Shown: one piece after another, positions 12,897-51,298 of the stretch
Position numbering within the stretch: the stretch's first letter is position 1
How the letters are laid out: each line of letters starts with the position of its first letter
Assembly (NCBI RefSeq): GCF_001194135.2
Contig: NC_068992.1
Coordinates: 19,149,618-19,213,617, forward strand
Direction: 5' to 3'
DNA: 64,000 nucleotides
Source: Octopus bimaculoides
Taxonomy: Eukaryota
Made by a program: the position numbers and the translations under genes
The notes under the pieces: model-generated
Seen by the model: the letters and a program-made list of their open reading frames with translations, nothing else
The model's database searches: none
What the model was told of the DNA's origin: nothing

Positions 12897-14096
12897 CAGG
12901 CTGCGTAAGATATTTGAGGACAGATTTATGTTCATAAAATAAAACATATATGATAGGAAACAATACATTTATTTACCAAGAAAATGCTATGAGGTTAAAA
13001 ATAAACATTCATTTCTATAATGTTATTCAGTAAAGCCACCTTCAGCTTCAACAACTGCATCTATATGAGATCTAAATCATCTACATCCTCGAATCAAATG
13101 GTCCTACTTCATTTTAGACATTACTCTGACTATGGCAACTTTTAAACAATCTTTGGTGTTATGGGCGTGTTCATTGATCTCTCTCTCAACAACGCTCCAC
13201 ATGTAATAGTTCAATAGAATGAGATCTGGGAAATTCGGAGGCCAAATGTTAGCGGTTATGTGATCATGAAAATTTTCAGCCATCCATTCCCGTGTTACTA
13301 GAGCCATGTGTGATAGTGCAGAGTCTTACTGAAGCAAGTATGGCCTTCCGTTGCATATACTGTCTAACCATGGCTTAAGGAGGCATCACATGTCCTTCAT
13401 TGCTGACAACCCTTAAAACCTTGACAGTTGCAGGAAATTTTGTATGCATAGCACTTGGAACTTCAGAAGGGTCCGCACACAACCATCTGTCATTTCTTCT
13501 GTTAACTTCTTGATCTTGGTCGAAGTTTTTCTTGTTTGAGTAAAACCAAATCAAATCTTCTTCTGCTGGATTTTTCAATTTGCTTAAGAGCCTTTTAGAT
13601 CTAATGTAGGGATTGTTTTTGCTTTTTCTGACAAACTGACCTTTCCTCATCATGTAAGACATATATCTGATGTCTTCGTGGACAACATTTTTGACTGTTC
13701 CTTCTGACACATGGAGATCTTTTGCAATTAAGCTCGTGGACTTACTGGTATTATTATCAATGGTCTGTTGAACTTGCTGGATAAAATCAGCCGTTCTGAT
13801 CATTTCAGAATGTTTAGAATACTTTTTATGCTTTGAAACTGGTGATACATTCCTATCTTCAGTCTCTAGCTCCTTACGAACTTAATAGACTAAAGCTCAA
13901 GCAGCTTTTAAAAGTTGTGATATTTCTAAATTACCATGCTCAGCATTTATAACCACAATAACAGTATGCTTCTTCATTGCTTGAGTAAACCGAGGGTCTG
14001 CCATTATTATTTTCTGAACCAAAGATTTTATAGATTTAGCAAAAAATACAGTAGTGACTAAAAAAGGTATGTCCTCAAACACGTTACGCACCATAT
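12897..14096 (-). mobile_element. Decayed Tc1/mariner-superfamily transposon, maT/DD37D type
   Basis: ORF 13375..13803 contains WFYSNKKNFDQDQEVNRRNDRWL...HTKFPATVKVLRVVSNEGHVMPP, with the first D changed to N. After an internal deletion come KPWLDSICNGRPYLLQ*DSALSH and WPPNFPDLILLNYYMWS. There are 37 residues between the second D and the position of the third D, now N. TIRs: CAGGCTGCGTAAGATATTTGAGGACA (12897-12922) versus the reverse complement of 14070-14094, ATGGTGCGTAACGTGTTTGAGGACA. Confidence 0.9.
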
Positions 14097-17511: not shown

Positions 17512-17704
17512 CTGGAAGCACAAGGCCTCAAATTTTGGGTAAGAGATTAAGTCGATTAAATCGATCCTGGTACTAATTTTATCGACCCCGAAGGATGAAA
17601 GGCAAAGCCGACCTCGGTGAAATTTGAACTCAGATGGTACCGCAGGCGAAATACCGCTATGTATTTCGCCCGGCGTGCTAACGATTCTGCCAGCTCCCTG
17701 CCCT
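17512..17704 (-). mobile_element. SINE family A
   Basis: Reverse-complement motifs TTTATCGACCCCGAAGGATGAAAGGC, GACCTCGG, TTTGAACTCAG and GCTAACGATTCTGCCAGCTC. Confidence 0.9.
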
Positions 17705-17707
17705 GAA

Positions 17708-18961
17708 TATGTACCATATATAATGCGATGTTTTCAATGCACGAAGTAACAGACGGAGGGGGACGGGATAAACTACCTGCATCAACTTGCTACAAAAGCA
17801 AGAAGTAATTTTAGCTTGACTTATTCTTAGTGCAAATTTTGAAGAGTGAAGTTTGAGTTTAACAGTTATTTTTCAAAGCTATAATGGAAAAGAAAAAGGA
17901 GCATTTTCGGCATATTTTGCTGTATGAGTTCAATAAAGACAACACGACGGCAAGTGCGAAGAATATTAATGCAATATATGGGGATCGGACAATAGGCTTA
18001 AGCCAGTGTCCACAGTGGTTCCAGCAATTCTGAGTCGGAACTACAACTTAGAAGACGGACCTCGTTGTAGAAAATCTGCAGAGCTCGGCGAGGACGATCT
18101 GCAAATCTTGGTGGAACAAATTCTCATCATAACTGCTGAGGAACTAGCAAAGTAGCCTGGATCTCGTCATTCAACCATTCCTCGACCCCTACGTACTATC
18201 GGAAAAGCCAGTAATTTGGGTGAAAGGATTTCTTACAAACTTTCCGAGTTTAACGGCGCACAGAGAGTGTGTGTGTTCTCCTTTGCTGTTACATCTCACA
18301 AATGAACATTCTTTTGACCGAATAGTGACTGGTGATGAGAAATGAGTTCTCTATAAAAATGTCAAGCGCCGAAGAAAGTGGGAAGAGAAAGGAGTAACAT
18401 CGAAACCCCAGGTCTTCACCCACGTAAGTTGTTGTGATCTGTTTGGTGGGATATGAAAGTTTAGTCCCCTTTGAACTTTTAAACCAAAATCAGTGATAAG
18501 AAAGGAAATCTACTGCGAGCAGCTTGAGAGGGTTCAGTCAGCACTACAAGAAAACGACCATCTTTGGTTTTAAGACGAAAGATGTTCTTCCAGGAGGATA
18601 ATGCTCGGCCACATACAACGAGCATGACATTCGTAAGGCCGGAGCAGTTTGAATGGGAAACGATGTCACACCAACATATTTGCCGGGGATTGCTCCATCT
18701 GATTATCATTTATTCCGCAGTTTCAAGATCATTTGGACGGAGGAAATATGAATTCTGTAGACGAGGTCAGAACAGTAGAAGAGAAGTATTTTTCCTCGCG
18801 GACAAGTGAATTTTGGAAGAGGTGCCTTGCAAGTCTATTAGATTGAAGAGAATTATAGATAATGAAGGTGAGTATGTTCTAGATTAAAAAAAGAACTTTG
18901 TTTATCTTAATTTTGAAAAATAAACATGTATGAAAAAACCGTATTATTTATAGGATGACCT

Positions 18962-25693: not shown

Positions 25694-25910
25694 TAAGAAG
25701 GTCAGTTACCGGAATCGTTAGCCCGCTTGGCAAAATGTTTAGCAGCATTTTGTTCGTCTTTACGTTCTGCGTTCAAATTCCGCGGAGGTTGACTTGGCCT
25801 TTCATCATTTCGGGGTCAATAAAATAAGTACCAGTTGAATAATGTGGTCGATGTAATCGACGTAGCCCTGACCACGAACTTTCTGGCCTTGTGATAAAAT
25901 TTGAAACCAA
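25694..25910 (+). mobile_element. SINE family A
   Basis: GAATCGTTAGC...GTTCAAATTCCGCGGAGG...GCCTTTCATCATTTCGGGGTCAATAAAATAAGTACCAG...GGCCTTGTGATAAAATTTGAAACC. Confidence 0.9.
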
Positions 25911-27011: not shown

Positions 27012-27222
27012 ATTGCAAATTTTGGCACAATACCAGCTATTTCGGTGGAACTGACAAGTGGATTACATCAATCTCAGTGTTCACTTGTACTTATTTTATC
27101 GATCCCAAAAGAATGGAAGGCAAAGTAGATCTCTGCAGAATCTGAACTCAGATCGTAAAGACAGACGAAATGCCGCTATGTATTTTGTCCGGTGTGTTTG
27201 CGATTCTACCGGGTAGCCGCAT
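27012..27222 (-). mobile_element. SINE family A
   Basis: Reverse-complement tail CAAATTTTGGCACAA, core GTACTTATTTTATCGATCCC and head GCGATTCTACC. Confidence 0.87.
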
Positions 27223-32363: not shown

Positions 32364-33767
32364 NNNNNNNNNNNNNNNNNNNNNNNNNNNNNNNNNNNNN
32401 NNNNNNNNNNNNNNNNNNNNNNNNNNNNNNNNNNNNNNNNNNNNNNNNNNNNNNNNNNNNNNNNNNNNNNNNNNNNNNNNNNNNNNNNNNNNNNNNNNNN
32501 NNNNNNNNNNNNNNNNNNNNNNNNNNNNNNNNNNNNNNNNNNNNNNNNNNNNNNNNNNNNNNNNNNNNNNNNNNNNNNNNNNNNNNNNNNNNNNNNNNNN
32601 NNNNNNNNNNNNNNNNNNNNNNNNNNNNNNNNNNNNNNNNNNNNNNNNNNNNNNNNNNNNNNNNNNNNNNNNNNNNNNNNNNNNNNNNNNNNNNNNNNNN
32701 NNNNNNNNNNNNNNNNNNNNNNNNNNNNNNNNNNNNNNNNNNNNNNNNNNNNNNNNNNNNNNNNNNNNNNNNNNNNNNNNNNNNNNNNNNNNNNNNNNNT
32801 ATATATATTATATATATATATATTGAAAAAAAGTCGTCAGAATTATGGAATAACTTCTTTCATTTATTTTGTACATATATTAGCGCTTTCGTTCGTGTTT
32901 CGAACTTGTCAAATATAATTTTGTGAAAATACAGAGATCTTGCTTATTTATATAAAACAGGTGTATTTTGGGGTTTTGTTTATAACAGAACATTGTTTTG
33001 TTGTTTTTTTTTTGTTTTTTGGGGGTGAGGCTTTGGAGACAATGGAAGATGTATAAGCAGATAGATAGATAGATAGACAGGCAGATAGAGGGATAGATAG
33101 ATAGATAGATAGATTGATAGTCGACAGATAGAGAGCTGGATGTGGTAAAAGAGAGAGAGAAGGGCCATTGTATTGAATGGTCTTTTTAAGGGGTGTCAAA
33201 TAAATAAATAAGGGTAAAAACGTGTTTACTACTTACTCTATTGTTTCGAGAGGGTGACTAGGGATGGTAAGAGAAGGAAGAAAAGAAAAAGAAAGAAGAG
33301 AGAAGAAAAAATAGAGAATAATACATAGAAAATATAAATAATACAACAAATGTCTTCCTGATTTTTCTTTGTTTTTTAGTTCTTTGTTTTTATATTCTTT
33401 GTCCTTTCTTTTTATATACATTGAGTCCTATTTAGAATATATTCCTGTCATACATTCATTTATTTATTTATTTTTGGTAAGGTGTAGTTCTGCATGAGTG
33501 TATGTTTATATAATATTTGTAAATTTGAAAAATCAAATTAGTNNNNNNNNNNNNNNNNNNNNNNNNNNNNNNNNNNNNNNNNNNNNNNNNNNNNNNNNNN
33601 NNNNNNNNNNNNNNNNNNNNNNNNNNNNNNNNNNNNNNNNNNNNNNNNNNNNNNNNNNNNNNNNNNNNNNNNNNNNNNNNNNNNNNNNNNNNNNNNNNNN
33701 NNNNNNNNNNNNNNNNNNNNNNNNNNNNNNNNNNNNNNNNNNNNNNNNNNNNNNNNNNNNNNNNNNN

Positions 33768-33820: not shown

Positions 33821-34020
33821 TAGATGGCAAGCTGACAGAATCGTTAGCAGGCCGGGCGAAATGCTTACCGGCATTTCGTCCTTCCTTCGTTCTGAGTTCA
33901 AATACCACCGTAGTCGACTTTGCTCCCGCGTCATTTTGGGGTGCGAAGTCGATATGCTAAGCACCAGGTCAGTTCTGGAGTCGATGTAATCGACTTGTCC
34001 CCGAAATTGCTGGTCTTGTT
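33821..34020 (+). mobile_element. SINE family A
   Basis: GATGGCAAGCTGACAGAATCGTTAGCAGGCCGGGCGAAATGCTT...CTGAGTTCAAAT...GTCGATGTAATCGACTT...GAAATTGCTGGTCTTG. Confidence 0.9.
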
Positions 34021-34149
34021 GATTTTCCTAACTTTCAAACTGATATTAAGGTTTACACAGTCACCTTGATTTCTTTCCATCACATCTCTTGCAAACAACT
34101 TGCGTATGCAAGTGCTACCAGTCAAGAACTGTACATACCAGAAGCCAGC

Positions 34150-34236
34150 AAGTGTATGTTGTCAACAGGAGAGAATCTGCGCCGTTTCGGGGCCTACCTC
34201 TCGGCGCGCATTCTCTCCTGACGACCCTATACACTT
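34150..34236 (-). ncRNA. Candidate pri-/pre-microRNA hairpin
   Basis: 35-position stem with no bulges (plus-strand i pairs with 68386-i), 28 Watson-Crick pairs and a 17-nt loop (34185-34201). On the minus strand there is a basal UG at 34238-34237 and a CNNC (CUUC) at 34144-34141. No expression data. Confidence 0.5.
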
Positions 34237-34392
34237 CAAGCTGTAGTCGCAACACTTATATTCAGATATAAAACTTTAATTTCCGAAAGCTAGTTTTTAA
34301 GAAACATTAATCAATTTTTAACCAAATTCATCGACTTTACTTCAACGAGTCAGTCTTTAATGATTAAAGCGATTATGACTAACATAGACAGC

Positions 34393-35363
34393 TTAAGTCT
34401 TCTTCTGTGACATTGCACGGTCTCTTACTAAATAGTTTAAATCTTCTTCCTTAAATAAGCGTGGCTCATTTTTGTTTTTGTTTTTAGAATCAACTACGTA
34501 CGCTTCATCGATAGGGGAATCAGGGGGTTTATCATGTGACGTATCAAAGTCTTCAAGTGAATCATGTGAGAGTGGAACTAGGACAGGGTTCTCGAAGTCA
34601 AGTAGGACCGGCTTTAGAGCCGACTTACAATCTGCATACACAATTTTTGCTTTGGTCTTCTTTGAGAAACCACTAATATTAGTCATGCAAAAGTAACAAT
34701 CAGAGACATAATTCGTTGGCTCACGCCATACTATTGGTACAGCAAAAGTCATTCTCTTCCATTTTCCATTCAGCCACTGTGTAAGCTCTGAGTAACACAC
34801 GGTGCAGCATATATGAAGCGTCCACCTCCTGTCTTAGTCCCCAACTGTTACACCCGAAATAATTTGTAGTTTTTAATTTGGTGGCAATGTTCTTCCGCTG
34901 GTCACGCGGAGCAAATTTTCCACAAACATAACAAAAGTTATCTGGGGGATTCACACAGATTCTCCTATTCATGATCTAACACAATGAACACAATTAAATC
35001 AGCAATCATGCAGAGCGAGAGATACACATACCACAGGCGTCGGCAGCGCAAACGACATTGAAAGTTACCAAGAACAAACTGACGTATTTGGCGGTTGCAC
35101 ACAAAACGCCAGCGCCATCTATTGCTAAGCTAAATACTGAACCTTCTCATCGTTTGCTTTATTGCTGTTATTTCTTTAACCTTGAACTAAGACCGCTTTC
35201 ATTTTAGCAAATTTTACATTACGGACTTTATCTATCCGAAAGTATAGTTAAAATATGGCGCATCCGCATTATTCAAAATCCTGACATACTAGAACAATTT
35301 TGAATACAGATTCGGAACCAGAATCCTCGATTTAGTCTAAAACACATGTTTTTAATCCAGTAG
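34393..35363 (-). mobile_element. 5' fragment of a CMC/Chapaev3-like DNA transposon
   Basis: Frameshifted transposase N-terminus MNRRICVNPPDNFCYVCG...YFGC plus WLNG...FAVPIVWREPTNYVSDCYFCMTNISGFSKKTK...LFKEEDLNYLVRD (ORFs 34721..34972 and 34393..34800). This cysteine-rich pattern is typical of Chapaev3 transposases. A putative terminus ...CAGATTCGGA...TTAGTCTAAAACAC...CCAGTAG lies at about 35306-35363. The catalytic region is absent. Confidence 0.75.
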
Positions 35364-36358
35364 CAGAATCTTTATTGTTGTCCAGTGTTATCAGAAGATC
35401 CTTCGCAAAGTGCGGTGCAGAATACATCGACGCAGAAAATGCTGTCAGCAAAAATAGATACGATAAAATATATAGAGAAAAGGTATGGTTTGTCTGTAAA
35501 ATTCCCCTACACGTACACACACATACACACTCTCTCTGAACACGTCCAGCACTAGTGAGTTAATCTAGGAAACAGATCTACTTGACCGTCACCAATAGCG
35601 AAAACGGACGTACAATGGAAGTGGATACCTTTTTATGTTTTGTTTTGTTTTGAGAATCTCATTTCCCATAACGAATTTAAGCAATCTGAACGATAATGTA
35701 CAATATATATATATATATATATATANNNNNNNNNNNNNNNNNNNNNNNNNNNNNNNNNNNNNNNNNNNNNNNNNNNNNNNNNNNNNNNNNNNNNNNNNNN
35801 NNNNNNNNNNNNNNNNNNNNNNNNNNNNNNNNNNNNNNNNNNNNNNNNNNNNNNNNNNNNNNNNNNNNNNNNNNNNNNNNNNNNNNNNNNNNNNNNNNNN
35901 NNNNNNNNNNNNNNNNNNNNNNNNNNNNNNNNNNNNNNNNNNNNNNNNNNNNNNNNNNNNNNNNNNNNNNNNNNNNNNNNNNNNNNNNNNNNNNNNNNNN
36001 NNNNNNNNNNNNNNNNNNNNNNNNNNNNNNNNNNNNNNNNNNNNNNNNNNNNNNNNNNNNNNNNNNNNNNNNNNNNNNNNNNNNNNNNNNNNNNNNNNNN
36101 NNNNNNNNNNNNNNNNNNNNNNNNNNNNNNNNNNNNNNNNNNNNNNNNNNNNNNNNNNNNNNNNNNNNNNNNNNNNNNNNNNNNNNNNNNNNNNNNNNNN
36201 NNNNNNNNNNNNNNNNNNNNNNNNNNNNNNNNNNNNNNNNNNNNNNNNNNNNNNNNNNNNNNNNNNNNNNNNNNNTATATGTTCATATATTCATGTTCAT
36301 ATATTCATATATATAAATATACATGAATTTATATATATTCATTTGCATGTGGCTGTCT

Positions 36359-40683: not shown

Positions 40684-42300
40684 CATTTACACATAACAGA
40701 TTAGACTGTTGAAAAATTCCTAATATCGGGCTACAACACGTAACCTTAGCTGTCAAAGACCTTCATCCTTTTTTTCTGAAGCTGCACTAAACTAGGCTTT
40801 ATATATATTTCCTCTATCCATCTATACAAATCTTTAGAAATAATTCGTAATGCACCTATAACTACTGTGATACATTTTACCCGCACTTTCCATAGTATCT
40901 GTACTTCAATGGTTAGGTCCTGGTAATTTCCTTGCTTTTCTACACCTCTTATATTGACTTTCTCGTCATTTGGGACTGACAAGTCAATTACATAACATAT
41001 TTTGTTCTTTTTGTCTACAACTATTAAATCAAGCCTTCTAGGTTTTATTACTCAGTCAGTCTGAATGATAAAACCCGTAAATGTCTTATTTTCCTTACTT
41101 TTTAGCATTTTACTAGGTTCATGCCTCTTATCAGTATGTTCAAATCCGAGATTTCTACATAACACCTACAGGATTATTCTCCCTAGATTGACATATCTTT
41201 TCTTGCATTCTTTCTGTGCCTACACACTGCATTCATTAAGTATATCAGTAACACATTCCTCCTTTGATTTACATAACCTGCAATGGGAATCTACCTGATT
41301 TTTGTCTATCTTAAGTATTATCCAGGTACTCCTCAATGTCTGATCATGTGCTGCTACTAACAAACCTTTTCTCTCCTTTTTCAGCCTTCATTCCTGCAAT
41401 CGTAACCATGCTTCATTATTTCTATTTTCTGCCACTTTCTTTGGAAATCTACCATGCCAAGTCATCTCTTGCCAGTCAGACAATCTTGTTTTTTTTTCTG
41501 CTTTTTAACTACAATTGGCTTCATGGCTTTCCTATCTGATACTTTTACACTAGAAGCTCTTCATAAAATCTCCTCACTGTTACCTATATAGGAGGCTATA
41601 TCTAATCTAGCTAAATCAGCATGGTTTTCCAGTGATATTAACACTCTGTCACCTTCCTTCTAGGTAAATACCCTCTTGCTACTCCTGCTTTTTTATGATG
41701 TCCTTCATTTATATTGAACTCTTTCCCAGTTCTTCTGTCTAGTTTAACTAATTTAGATTTTGACCATCTACAAAAGCTGCTGATCCTCTGAATAACGATA
41801 CTGCTCAAGTATTTACAGCCCTTACTAGATTATGACAGTTTAGCCTTGACTTCATCAACTTCCTCTCCCTCCTGATATACTCCTCAATTTTCTATAGATA
41901 GTACTCTGTCAGATTCTAATTCTTCTAGATACTTATAACTTACACTTCTCAGTGATTTCAATGTCTGGCCATCTGGTAATTGAATGCCCTCTCTGCTGAC
42001 TACCTGTCACTTTTTTTATGACCGATACTTGGCACTTGTGTATGCCAATACCATACCTACATATTTGCTGAAGTCTTACAGTCTGTATCAAAGAATCTAC
42101 CACTTTTGTTTTCTTATTCTTAGAAAAAAATTCCGATCATCAATGTAGAGCAAATGCTTAATTTTTCCGTCACGATCTTTAAACTTTTACCTTCCTCAAG
42201 ACTAAACTGAGTGAGATTAAGCATAACACAGATATTAAAAGTGATAACGAGTCTCTGGCGAACTCATCTCTTGATACTAACTTTCCCTAAGTGTGTATCG
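40682..42300 (-). mobile_element. 5'-truncated R4/Dong-like non-LTR retrotransposon, copy 1 (RT to RLE)
   Basis: Minus-strand motifs: DSLSLLISVLCLI (RT motif GDSLSPLLF), KIKHLLYIDD (42133-42165), EGIQLPDGQT, KSRLNCHNLVRAVNT*AVS, a CRLC...C zinc knuckle, RRLDLIVVDKKNKICYVIDLSVPND...LW...VVIGAL and LQK. The 3' end abuts (TAA)n (plus strand (ATT)n, about 40603-40681). Confidence 0.9.
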
Positions 42301-49106: not shown

Positions 49107-49323
49107 ATGGTTTCAAATTTTTCCACAATGGCAAGAATCTTAGAGGAGAGAATGAGTCGATTACATCGACCATAGTGTTTCACTGGTGTTTATTTTATCG
49201 ATCCCTTAAAGAATGAAAGGCAAAGACGACCTCAGCGGAATTTGAACTCAGAACGAGAGGTCAGACGAAATGCCGAAAAAAGTTTTGCCCGAAGTGCTAA
49301 CGATTCTGCAACGTGACCGCCTT
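49107..49323 (-). mobile_element. SINE family A
   Basis: GGTTTCAAATTTTTCCACAA...GTCGATTACATCGAC...GAATTTGAACTCAGAAC...GCTAACGATTCTGC...CCGCCTT. Confidence 0.9.
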
Positions 49324-50986: not shown

Positions 50987-51164
50987 TGGCCCGAAAATTT
51001 TGCGGATGTGGGACCAGTCGATTAGATCGACCCAGTACGTAACTGGTATTTAATTTATCGACCCCCGAAAGAATTCAAGGCAAAGTCGACCTCGGTAGAA
51101 TGTTAACTTAGAACTTGAAGACAGATGAAATACCGTTAGATATTTCGCCCGGCATCCTAACGTT
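50987..51164 (-). mobile_element. SINE family A
   Basis: GTCGATTAGATCGACCCAG...TTTATCGACCCCCGAAAG...GTCGACCTCGG...TATTTCGCCCGGCATCCTAACG. Confidence 0.88.
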
Positions 51165-51298
51165 TCTTATTTCTTTATTGCTCACAAGTTGCTAAACACA
51201 GCGGGGACAAACAAGGACAGACAAAGTGATTAAGTCGATTACATCAACCCCAGTGCTTAACTGGTACTTAATTTATCGATCCCGAAAGGATGAAAGGC
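51165..51298 (-). mobile_element. SINE family A variant with a different 3' tail (truncated by gap)
   Basis: Family A core (AAGTCGATTACATCAACCCCAG...TTTATCGATCCCGAAAGGATGAAAGGC) joined to the tail TTTCTTTATTGCTCACAAG...GGACAAACAAGGACAGAC instead of the usual GGTTTCAAATTTTGGCACAAG. Confidence 0.85.

What the first reader, a model, noticed from the sequence alone, without database searches (positions are those of the whole stretch)
34141..34238. Unannotated hairpin with canonical Microprocessor geometry: candidate novel microRNA gene (minus strand)
Seen in sequence: 34150-34184 pairs with 34202-34236 in a single register with no bulges. Of 35 positions, 28 are Watson-Crick pairs (blocks of 8, 3, 11 and 6 bp), closing a 17-nt loop. 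The hairpin is GC-rich in an AT-rich background and lies between a SINE and a Chapaev3 fragment, outside any repeat I recognise. On the minus strand, a 5' Drosha cut before 34224 puts UG (34238-34237) at -14/-13. It leaves 11 nt of lower stem on the 3' arm and puts CUUC (34144-34141) 16 nt after the 3' cut. Predicted products are 5p UCGUCAGGAGAGAAUGCGCGCC (34224-34203) and 3p CGCAGAUUCUCUCCUGUUGACA (34181-34160). The plus strand lacks CNNC at the equivalent position, so the motifs are strand-specific. Established knowledge: an approximately 35-bp stem, a loop of at least 10 nt, a basal UG and a CNNC at +16 to +18 are pri-miRNA determinants, and coleoid cephalopods have a large lineage-specific miRNA expansion. 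Inference: this is a miRNA locus. I do not recognise either arm as a conserved bilaterian or molluscan family, but it could already be catalogued as an octopus-specific one.
Basis: partly seen in the sequence, partly recalled or inferred. Interest (0 to 1): 0.8.

Follow-up and report, generated by a model that had tools for sequence, protein, structure and literature searches.

The report
Lone 87-base hairpin, unproven microRNA candidate
The hairpin is really there and has the right shape for a microRNA precursor. Nothing I could test shows that it is a gene rather than one of the many leftover inverted repeats in a transposon-rich genome, so it stays a low-probability candidate.

Summary
Positions 34150-34184 pair with 34202-34236 (35 positions, 28 Watson-Crick, no bulges) around a 17-nt loop. 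This is the most stable non-repetitive fold in the window (-55 kcal/mol, z about -5 to -6). About 5e-4 such repeats are expected by chance per window.

The proposed minus-strand products give correct 2-nt overhangs. UG at -14/-13 and CUUC at +16 are present on the minus strand only.

These facts do not make it a microRNA:
- Both strands fold equally well.
- G:U-compatible differences are split between the strands.
- The two motifs coincide in about 3% of arbitrary window positions once strand and a ±1-nt shift of the cut position are left free.
- An equally good "Helitron 3' end" reading can be made from the same bases.
- No Rfam family matches.

The decisive tests could not be run with these tools: small-RNA reads, conservation in another cephalopod, genomic copy number and a MirGeneDB lookup. 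My attempts through proteins, metagenomes and paper supplements found nothing.

The hairpin sits in about 400 nt of unassigned DNA between a SINE and a truncated transposon fragment, and it belongs to neither.

Best reading (about 0.6): a decayed, non-genic inverted repeat. A real, probably lineage-specific microRNA: about 0.15.

The parts
34150..34184 (.). Left arm of the inverted repeat (the 3' arm if the minus strand is transcribed)
   Evidence: the repeat finder I1; local alignment bounded exactly at 34150-34184 / 34236-34202
34185..34201 (.). 17-nt spacer / apical loop. RNAfold adds a weak 2-bp inner helix, 34197-34198 with 34189-34190
34202..34236 (.). Right arm of the inverted repeat (the 5' arm on the minus strand)
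34203..34224 (-). Hypothetical 5p product UCGUCAGGAGAGAAUGCGCGCC. This is a prediction only, with no read evidence
   Evidence: sequence confirmed; pairs so as to leave 2-nt overhangs
34160..34181 (-). Hypothetical 3p product CGCAGAUUCUCUCCUGUUGACA. This is a prediction only
   Evidence: pair table
34237..34238 (-). UG dinucleotide at -14/-13 from the proposed 5' cut
   Evidence: test returns True; the position convention is taken from PMC8616936
34141..34144 (-). CUUC (CNNC) starting 16 nt after the proposed 3' cut. Its last C also begins CUGG (34141-34138), which is followed by U. Those same bases support the rival Helitron-end reading

Best explanation
An isolated, partly decayed 87-nt inverted repeat in repeat-rich, apparently non-coding DNA, not a dedicated gene. 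It most likely arose at the DNA level. One route is insertion of a very short foldback or MITE-type element, built almost entirely of two 35-bp terminal inverted repeats, like the 80-bp MADE1 elements of primates. The other is a local inverted duplication made by template switching or fold-back repair. It has since accumulated substitutions.

Shown: the repeat exists, is far beyond chance, has sharp ends, and belongs to neither neighbouring repeat.

Inferred: its origin, and that it has no dedicated function. If the region is transcribed, the RNA would form a hairpin that Drosha and Dicer could plausibly cut. Any small RNAs made that way would be incidental until shown otherwise.
For: - The repeat is real and not a chance match.
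- It ends abruptly at 34150 and 34236. Flank-versus-flank inverted similarity equals the shuffles (score 16 against 16.2 ± 2.4). That suits a discrete DNA unit.
- There are no indels between the arms, as expected when a once-perfect palindrome decays by substitution.
- Both strands fold equally well. The three wobble-compatible differences are split between the strands (alignment), so there is no strand-specific RNA-level signal.
- The setting is transposon debris. A SINE lies 130 nt upstream (33822-34019, with at least 8 other copies or fragments in the window). A truncated transposon 5' fragment lies 185 nt downstream (35387 to about 34421, minus strand). There are mariner pieces elsewhere. 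No host exon, tRNA or Rfam family was found in 64 kb.
- Base rate: Zolotarov et al. report about 162-164 curated miRNA genes per octopus genome (PMC9699675). This window alone holds one such complex hairpin per 58 kb.
- The immediately flanking 5-mers CCAGC and CAAGC match at 4 of 5 positions. This could be a decayed target-site duplication, but it is weak (read).
Against: - No second copy of either arm or of the whole hairpin was found in the window or in 13.7 kb of related loci, even with profile search. A multi-copy element is therefore not demonstrated.
- The seven mismatches cluster in three symmetric internal loops (P = 0.0085 under random placement). Simple neutral decay does not predict this. 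Processed hairpins often look like this.
- The stem length of 35 bp falls in the 33-39 nt optimum, which is more than 6-fold enriched in real miRNAs over other hairpins (PMC5340965).
- UG and CNNC coincide on one strand (about 3% by chance).
- The candidate target-site duplication is not significant once other lengths and offsets are allowed.
Confidence: 0.6

Rival explanations
1. A genuine, probably young and lineage-specific, microRNA gene on the minus strand. A transcript through 34250 to 34130 folds into the hairpin. Drosha, guided by the basal UG and the downstream CNNC, cuts before 34224 and after 34160. Dicer removes the loop. The 5p arm (5' U, weaker 5' end pairing) would be loaded as the guide.
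For: - Stem of 35 bp and loop of 17 nt, with no bulges.
- 2-nt overhangs at both ends for the proposed duplex.
- UG at -14/-13 and CNNC at +16 on the minus strand only. The motif positions are those described in PMC8616936.
- Stem length lies in the optimal range (PMC5340965).
- Mismatches cluster as symmetric internal loops (P = 0.0085).
- No other copy is detectable, so a high-copy MITE is not shown.
- The octopus lineage has many novel miRNA families, and the published count is called an underestimate (PMC9699675).
Against: - There is no expression, conservation or database evidence of any kind.
- No Rfam miRNA family matches; the best is mir-942 at E about 2.
- None of 12 candidate seed-site 7-mers occurs among the target-site lists held for Zolotarov et al. 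Those files are truncated, so this is weak.
- The plus strand folds as well or better. G:U-compatible differences do not favour the minus strand.
- The apical UGU/GUG and the mismatched GHG are absent.
- The proposed 3' cut lies inside a 3x3 internal loop.
- The motif coincidence is about 3% by chance once the free choices are counted. That is about as good as a Helitron-end reading of the same bases.
- The prior is low: hundreds of miRNA genes against probably thousands or more transposon-derived hairpins.
Confidence: 0.15
2. A hairpin that yields small RNAs of another kind. Examples are a plus-strand or bidirectionally transcribed hairpin processed by Dicer into endo-siRNAs, or one that feeds the piRNA pathway as part of a transposon-rich transcript. 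It would not be a canonical Drosha-dependent miRNA.
For: - Both strands fold into equally stable hairpins.
- The locus is embedded in transposon fragments.
Against: - There are no read data.
- A 35-bp imperfect stem is short for a hairpin-RNA type siRNA source (my own knowledge of Drosophila hpRNA loci).
- Nothing marks the region as a small-RNA cluster.
Confidence: 0.08
3. The 3' terminus of a Helitron lying on the minus strand. A terminal hairpin is followed about 12 nt later by CTRR (CUGG, 34141-34138), with the insertion junction before a T (34137). The element body would extend towards higher coordinates.
For: On the minus strand the stem ends at 34150. The next bases are GCUGGCUUCUGG|U, which places CTGG-T 12 nt after the stem (sequence). 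This matches the textbook Helitron 3' end layout, which I am recalling from my own knowledge of Kapitonov and Jurka's description. My rough estimate is that this has a chance probability of a few percent, similar to the miRNA motifs.
Against: - Helitron terminal hairpins are usually palindromes of 16-20 nt with small loops, not 35-bp stems with a 17-nt loop.
- The body upstream is a different, truncated transposon fragment.
- No second copy, 5' TC end or Rep/helicase remnant was found.
Confidence: 0.05
4. A chance match, an assembly artefact, or part of a known structured RNA or ribozyme (for example a Penelope-like-element hammerhead).
For: - A 16-nt identity (CGUCAGGAGAGAAUGC) with the Poseidon_Ac Penelope-like element (PMC11167929).
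- A CGAAAC string in the loop.
- The window is a gapped draft assembly with 20 runs of N.
Against: - The chance expectation is 5e-4.
- The arms are only 80% identical, whereas artefactual palindromes are perfect.
- There is no similarity to Poseidon_Ac beyond the 16-mer by blastn or tblastx.
- No hammerhead or any other Rfam family appears even at E up to 10.
Confidence: 0.02

Closest known systems
Canonical animal pri-miRNA hairpins (Drosha/DGCR8 substrates; octopus novel families in MirGeneDB, Zolotarov et al. 2022)
   Same: - Stem of about 35 bp and loop above 10 nt, with no bulges.
- A duplex with 2-nt overhangs can be drawn.
- Basal UG and downstream CNNC at the canonical distances on one strand.
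- 5' U on the predicted guide.
   Different: - No reads, no orthologue, no family match and no strand asymmetry in folding.
- The apical UGU and the mismatched GHG are absent.
- RNAfold extends weak pairing below the basal junction.
- None of the defining expression or conservation criteria could be tested.
Palindromic MITEs such as primate MADE1 (80 bp: two 37-bp terminal inverted repeats around 6 bp), the source of the miR-548 family (my own knowledge)
   Same: - Almost the whole 87-nt unit is two 35-bp inverted repeats around a short spacer.
- The ends are sharp.
- It lies among other transposon fragments, including mariner pieces.
- Such elements can be adopted as miRNA genes, so the two readings do not exclude each other.
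   Different: - No second copy was found in the 58 kb of window plus 13.7 kb of loci.
- There is no TA target-site duplication, only a weak 4-of-5 match of the flanking 5-mers.
- There is no similarity to the mariner fragments in the window.
Helitron 3' terminal hairpin followed by CTRR
   Same: A GC-rich hairpin followed 12 nt later by CTGG and then T on the minus strand.
   Different: - The stem and loop are far larger than is typical.
- No other Helitron feature is present.
- The upstream sequence is an unrelated transposon fragment.
Drosophila-type hairpin RNA (hpRNA) endo-siRNA loci (my own knowledge)
   Same: An inverted repeat that folds on itself and could be cut by Dicer.
   Different: hpRNA stems run to hundreds of base pairs. 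This one is 35 bp.

Membership tests
Animal microRNA gene (MirGeneDB / Zolotarov 2022 criteria) | Imperfect hairpin whose two arms pair over at least about 16 nt, with total stem about 33-39 bp | tested here: met
   28/35 Watson-Crick plus 1-2 G:U pairs; 19 of 22 positions paired in the proposed duplex. The optimal range is taken from PMC5340965.
Animal microRNA gene (MirGeneDB / Zolotarov 2022 criteria) | Terminal loop of at least 8-10 nt | tested here: met
   17 nt between the arms
Animal microRNA gene (MirGeneDB / Zolotarov 2022 criteria) | Single-stranded flanks below a defined basal junction | tested here: inconclusive
   RNAfold adds about 13 weak pairs below the stem (p 0.65-0.96), and more in longer contexts. 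The flanks show no inverted similarity above shuffles.
Animal microRNA gene (MirGeneDB / Zolotarov 2022 criteria) | Reads from both arms, 20-26 nt, with homogeneous 5' ends and 2-nt 3' overhangs | not testable with these tools
   No small-RNA read data are reachable. The overhang geometry is merely possible on the predicted fold.
Animal microRNA gene (MirGeneDB / Zolotarov 2022 criteria) | Presence in a second species (required for a novel octopus family, PMC9699675) | not testable with these tools
   No cephalopod genome is searchable by DNA. Indirect attempts found nothing: six-frame ORF search, exact-protein look-ups and two metagenome scans.
Animal microRNA gene (MirGeneDB / Zolotarov 2022 criteria) | Processing motifs: basal UG, CNNC, apical UGU/GUG, mismatched GHG (enhancers, not obligatory) | tested here: inconclusive
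   UG and CNNC are present on the minus strand. Their chance coincidence is 0.6% with strand and cut position fixed, and 3.1% with strand and a ±1-nt shift free. UGU/GUG at the apical junction and GHG at -7 to -5 are absent (sequence).
Animal microRNA gene (MirGeneDB / Zolotarov 2022 criteria) | Match to a catalogued family | tested here: not met
   Rfam 15: nothing at gathering score in the whole window. Around the hairpin the best hit is mir-942 at E 2.2. MirGeneDB itself is not available. No supplements are held for PMC11701709 or PMC10435380. There are no seed-site matches in the Zolotarov data.
MITE / foldback transposon | Terminal inverted repeats that make up the ends of a short unit | tested here: met
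   35-bp arms with sharp outer ends
MITE / foldback transposon | Target-site duplication flanking the unit | tested here: inconclusive
   CCAGC (34145-34149) against CAAGC (34237-34241) matches at 4 of 5 positions. This is not significant once other lengths and offsets are allowed (sequence).
MITE / foldback transposon | Multiple dispersed copies | tested here: not met
   No other copy in the window or in L001-L003 by pattern search, blastn or nhmmer. A family of up to about 10^4 copies per genome could still leave no second copy in 58 kb. Genome-wide copy number is not testable here.
Helitron 3' end | Short hairpin about 10-12 nt upstream of a 3' CTRR, inserted before T | tested here: inconclusive
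   CTGG then T, 12 nt after the stem on the minus strand. The hairpin is much larger than typical, and no second copy or 5' end was found.
Hammerhead ribozyme of Penelope-like elements | Conserved CUGANGA ... GAAA core with three helices | tested here: not met
   No hammerhead family at E up to 10. The 16-mer shared with Poseidon_Ac does not extend.

The most novel reading that the evidence does not exclude
A young, lineage-specific microRNA gene caught soon after its birth from an 87-nt inverted repeat lodged between transposon fragments. It would be transcribed from the minus strand, already carry a basal UG and a CNNC, and not yet be in any catalogue.
Probability: 0.13. Interest if true: 0.35.

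Novelty: new member of a known kind. Interest (0 to 1): 0.2.

Why it matters
If it is a real miRNA, it adds one species- or genus-specific gene to a lineage where about 90 novel families are already known. It would also be a small example of miRNA birth from a palindromic repeat. That is useful but not surprising.

If it is a relic repeat, as I think more likely, the value lies in the method. A 35-bp stem with a UG and a CNNC can be found by choosing the cut site after the fact. The same bases support an unrelated Helitron-end reading about equally well. Structure and motifs alone should therefore not be used to call miRNAs in transposon-rich genomes.

Tried and rejected
1. Known RNA family. 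Rfam 15 with E up to 10 around the hairpin, and at gathering score over the whole window, gave nothing. The mir-297 hits are (TA/TG)n artefacts.
2. Other copies in the window. Pattern search with up to 3 mismatches, blastn with word size 9, blastn-short, and nhmmer with an arm profile and with the whole hairpin found only the hairpin itself.
3. Reaching orthologues or paralogues through proteins. Exact look-up of two window ORFs returned nothing on record. A concatenated six-frame translation across the hairpin had no hit in 5.8 billion proteins. The collection clearly does not cover this genome's ORFs, so this negative carries almost no weight.
4. Metagenome scans with a two-arm pattern and a degenerate 22-mer returned 0 hits.
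5. Is the hairpin part of the neighbouring transposon? Relatives P0001-P0005 and loci L001-L003 show that homology stops at about 34421-34441, while L002 continues coding. Nothing in those loci resembles 34020-34420. Rejected.
6. Is it part of the SINE? The longer SINE copies in the window align no further than 34019. Rejected.
7. Penelope-like element or hammerhead, suggested by a 16-mer literature hit. Rejected.
8. Octopus miRNA catalogues. The Zolotarov supplements hold no precursor or mature sequences. None of 12 seed-site 7-mers and none of six 11- and 12-mers were found. The MirGeneDB 3.0 and MirMachine supplements are not held.
9. Host gene or intron context. Ten long, non-repetitive stop-free segments (73-168 aa) gave only a mariner transposase piece in Pfam. 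No exon was recognised.
10. CpG content as an age signal. The window has CpG observed/expected of 0.81 and the hairpin 1.12, which is uninformative.
11. SRA and ENA accession numbers of the related loci were not found in the literature, so the organism was not verified.
12. A first fold scan timed out. It was repeated with a coarser step.

Full report
**1. The observation**

The sequence at 34141-34238 is as described.
- The repeat finder reports arms 34150-34184 and 34202-34236, 35 nt, 80% complementary, with 17 nt between them.
- A direct alignment of arm 1 with the reverse complement of arm 2 gives matched blocks of 8, 3, 11 and 6. They are separated by 3, 2 and 2 mismatches, with no indels.
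- The 121-nt stretch 34130-34250 folds at -55.0 kcal/mol on the minus strand (z = -5.35) and at -54.5 on the plus strand (z = -6.20). In each case 0 of 200 shuffles did as well.
- A repeat of at least 28/35 with a 3-60 nt spacer is expected 5e-4 times in the 58,458 non-N bases of the window, and only about 22 times in 2.7 Gb of random sequence. The repeat is therefore real and was produced by a biological process.
- In a scan of 7,488 110-nt folds (mean -16.4, sd 7.3 kcal/mol) it ranks third. The two above it are microsatellite palindromes.
- GC is 0.54 in the hairpin against 0.345 for the window.

**2. The proposed processing geometry**

I checked this on the MFE pair table.
- The first base of 5p, 34224, pairs with 34162.
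- 3p ends at 34160, and the last base of 5p, 34203, pairs with 34183.
- 3p starts at 34181. Both ends of the duplex therefore have 2-nt 3' overhangs.
- UG sits at -14/-13 (34238-34237) and CUUC starts at +16 (34144). No plus-strand cut position from 34158 to 34165 has either motif. These are the positions given in the literature (PMC8616936; PMC5340965).

How much this is worth:
- At arbitrary positions of this window, UG occurs at 6.7%, CNNC at +16 to +18 at 9.5%, and both at 0.6%.
- Allowing either strand and a ±1-nt shift of the cut position, both occur at 3.1%.
- The cut site was chosen to fit. A 35-bp stem splits into about 11 + 22 + 2 by arithmetic.
- The apical UGU/GUG and the mismatched GHG are absent, and the 3' cut would fall inside a 3x3 internal loop.
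- RNAfold continues weak pairing below the stem (34237-34250 with 34133-34148, p 0.65-0.96) and further in longer contexts. At the DNA level the flanks have no inverted similarity above shuffles (16 against 16.2 ± 2.4). The 35-bp repeat therefore has sharp ends, and the extra pairs are incidental.

**3. Strand and selection signals**

- Both strands fold equally well.
- Of the seven arm differences, three are transitions that allow G:U. Two of these help the plus strand (34158 and 34178 on the left arm) and one helps the minus strand (34164:34222). Nothing marks the minus strand as the RNA under selection (alignment, pairs).
- One unexplained feature remains. The seven differences fall in three runs, which has P = 0.0085 under random placement. 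This is typical of processed hairpins. It could also come from multi-base mutation events.

**4. Surroundings**

- A SINE copy occupies 33822-34019 on the plus strand. At least eight other copies or fragments in the window match it at 67-81% identity, and the longer ones align no further than 34019.
- On the minus strand, two overlapping ORFs (34972 to 34724 and 34800 to 34393) encode a Cys-rich transposon N-terminus. They have no Pfam family.
- A protein search found five relatives, the best at 62% identity. Their contigs L001, L002 and L003 align to the window from 35387 down to about 34421-34441. L002 continues coding beyond that point. The window copy is therefore a 5' fragment truncated about 185 nt before the hairpin.
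- Nothing in those loci resembles 34020-34420. The hairpin lies in about 400 nt of unassigned, AT-rich DNA and belongs to neither neighbour.
- The label 'Chapaev3' could not be verified: Pfam finds nothing even in the fuller L003 copy.
- Elsewhere the window holds mariner transposase fragments and many microsatellites. It has no tRNA, no Rfam family and no recognisable host exon.

**5. Is it catalogued, conserved or multi-copy?**

None of this could be tested properly.
- Rfam has no match.
- MirGeneDB is not available. The supplements of the octopus miRNA paper hold only target-site k-mers. None of 12 candidate seed sites occurs there, but the files are truncated.
- Two other MirGeneDB-related papers have no supplements held.
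- A full-text search for 14-mers of the arms gave only two hits. One of them extends to a 16-mer in the Poseidon_Ac Penelope-like element, and that match goes no further.
- No cephalopod genome can be searched by DNA here.
- The indirect routes found nothing: exact ORF look-ups, a six-frame translation search and two metagenome scans. These negatives carry little weight, because the window's own ORFs are absent from those collections.
- Within the window and the fetched loci there is no second copy, not even a diverged half-site. This excludes only very high copy numbers.

**6. Weighing the readings**

- Published curation gives about 162-164 miRNA genes per octopus genome, which the authors call an underestimate (PMC9699675).
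- Complex hairpins of this quality are not chance events. In transposon-rich genomes they are produced in large numbers by foldback or MITE elements and by inverted duplications (established knowledge; MADE1 and miR-548 is the classic case). This window contributes one per 58 kb, although that figure is biased because the hairpin is the reason for the finding.
- Starting from a prior of well under a few percent, I apply three factors. Optimal stem length is more than 6-fold enriched in real miRNAs (PMC5340965). The UG+CNNC pair is worth roughly 5-fold by my estimate. The clustered mismatches are worth roughly 2-fold at most. This gives about 0.1-0.2 for a genuine miRNA.
- The same bases also fit a Helitron 3' end. 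The stem is followed by 12 nt ending in CTGG, then T, with a chance probability of a few percent. This shows how little such motif coincidences prove.

**7. Verdict**

The interpretation cannot be decided with the tools at hand.
- Most likely (about 0.6): a solitary, decayed inverted repeat of DNA-level origin that is not a dedicated gene.
- About 0.15: a real, probably lineage-specific miRNA on the minus strand.
- Smaller shares go to other small-RNA sources (0.08), a Helitron end (0.05) and artefacts (0.02).

Either way it is a new member of a known kind, of modest interest. Three ordinary analyses would settle it: small-RNA read mapping, genome-wide copy count and synteny in a sister species.

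Noticed in passing
33822-34019 (+); also 8208-8407, 8479-8674, 11518-11672, 25712-25892 (+); 17602-17695, 27027-27207, 49220-49308, 51010-51167 (-): A SINE family with nine or more copies or fragments in 64 kb at 67-81% identity. It has a tRNA-like B-box region (GAGTTCAAAT), but ARAGORN calls no tRNA. The longer copies align no further than 34019.
   Followed up: partly
about 34421-35387 (-); ORFs 34972-34724 and 34800-34393: A 5' fragment of a transposon with a Cys-rich N-terminal ORF (CYVCG..., WREP..DCYFC, LNYLVRD) and one frameshift near 34800. It is truncated at about 34421-34441. Relatives exist in Logan and ENA assemblies (L001-L003, 76-79% nucleotide identity).
   Followed up: partly
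40923-41024 (-) and ORF 40749-41051 (-): A weak second match (35% over 34 aa, E 0.014) to the CxxC N-terminus of the same transposon protein. It lies next to a 101-aa ORF that resembles the C-terminal part of retroelement polyproteins (my own recognition). Pfam finds nothing.
   Followed up: no
3574-3849 (+), 13107-13881 (-), 18528-18806 (+): Mariner-type transposase fragments. The first hits Pfam PF01359 Transposase_1 (E 1.3e-6). I recognised the others by motif only (…FFQEDNARPHT…, …NFPDL…).
   Followed up: partly
All 20 runs of N (e.g. 33543-33767, 35726-36275); 9991-10100; 58006-58115: Many of the assembly gaps border (TA)n or (TG/CA)n microsatellites. These tracts give the most stable 'hairpins' in the fold scan and sub-threshold Rfam mir-297, mir-3149 and mir-1277 hits, which are artefacts of low complexity.
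   Followed up: yes
34208-34223 (-): A 16-nt identity (CGUCAGGAGAGAAUGC) with the start of the ORF of the Anolis Penelope-like element Poseidon_Ac, printed in PMC11167929. There is no further similarity by blastn or tblastx, so I judge it a coincidence.
   Followed up: yes
34145-34149 and 34237-34241: The 5-mers that directly flank the inverted repeat, CCAGC and CAAGC, match at 4 of 5 positions. This could be a decayed 5-bp target-site duplication, but it is not significant once other lengths are allowed.
   Followed up: partly
34090-34113: A small separate palindrome, CTTGC-GTAT-GCAAG, about 40 nt upstream of the hairpin. RNAfold also draws a short hairpin at 34120-34132. Both are at chance level.
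   Followed up: no
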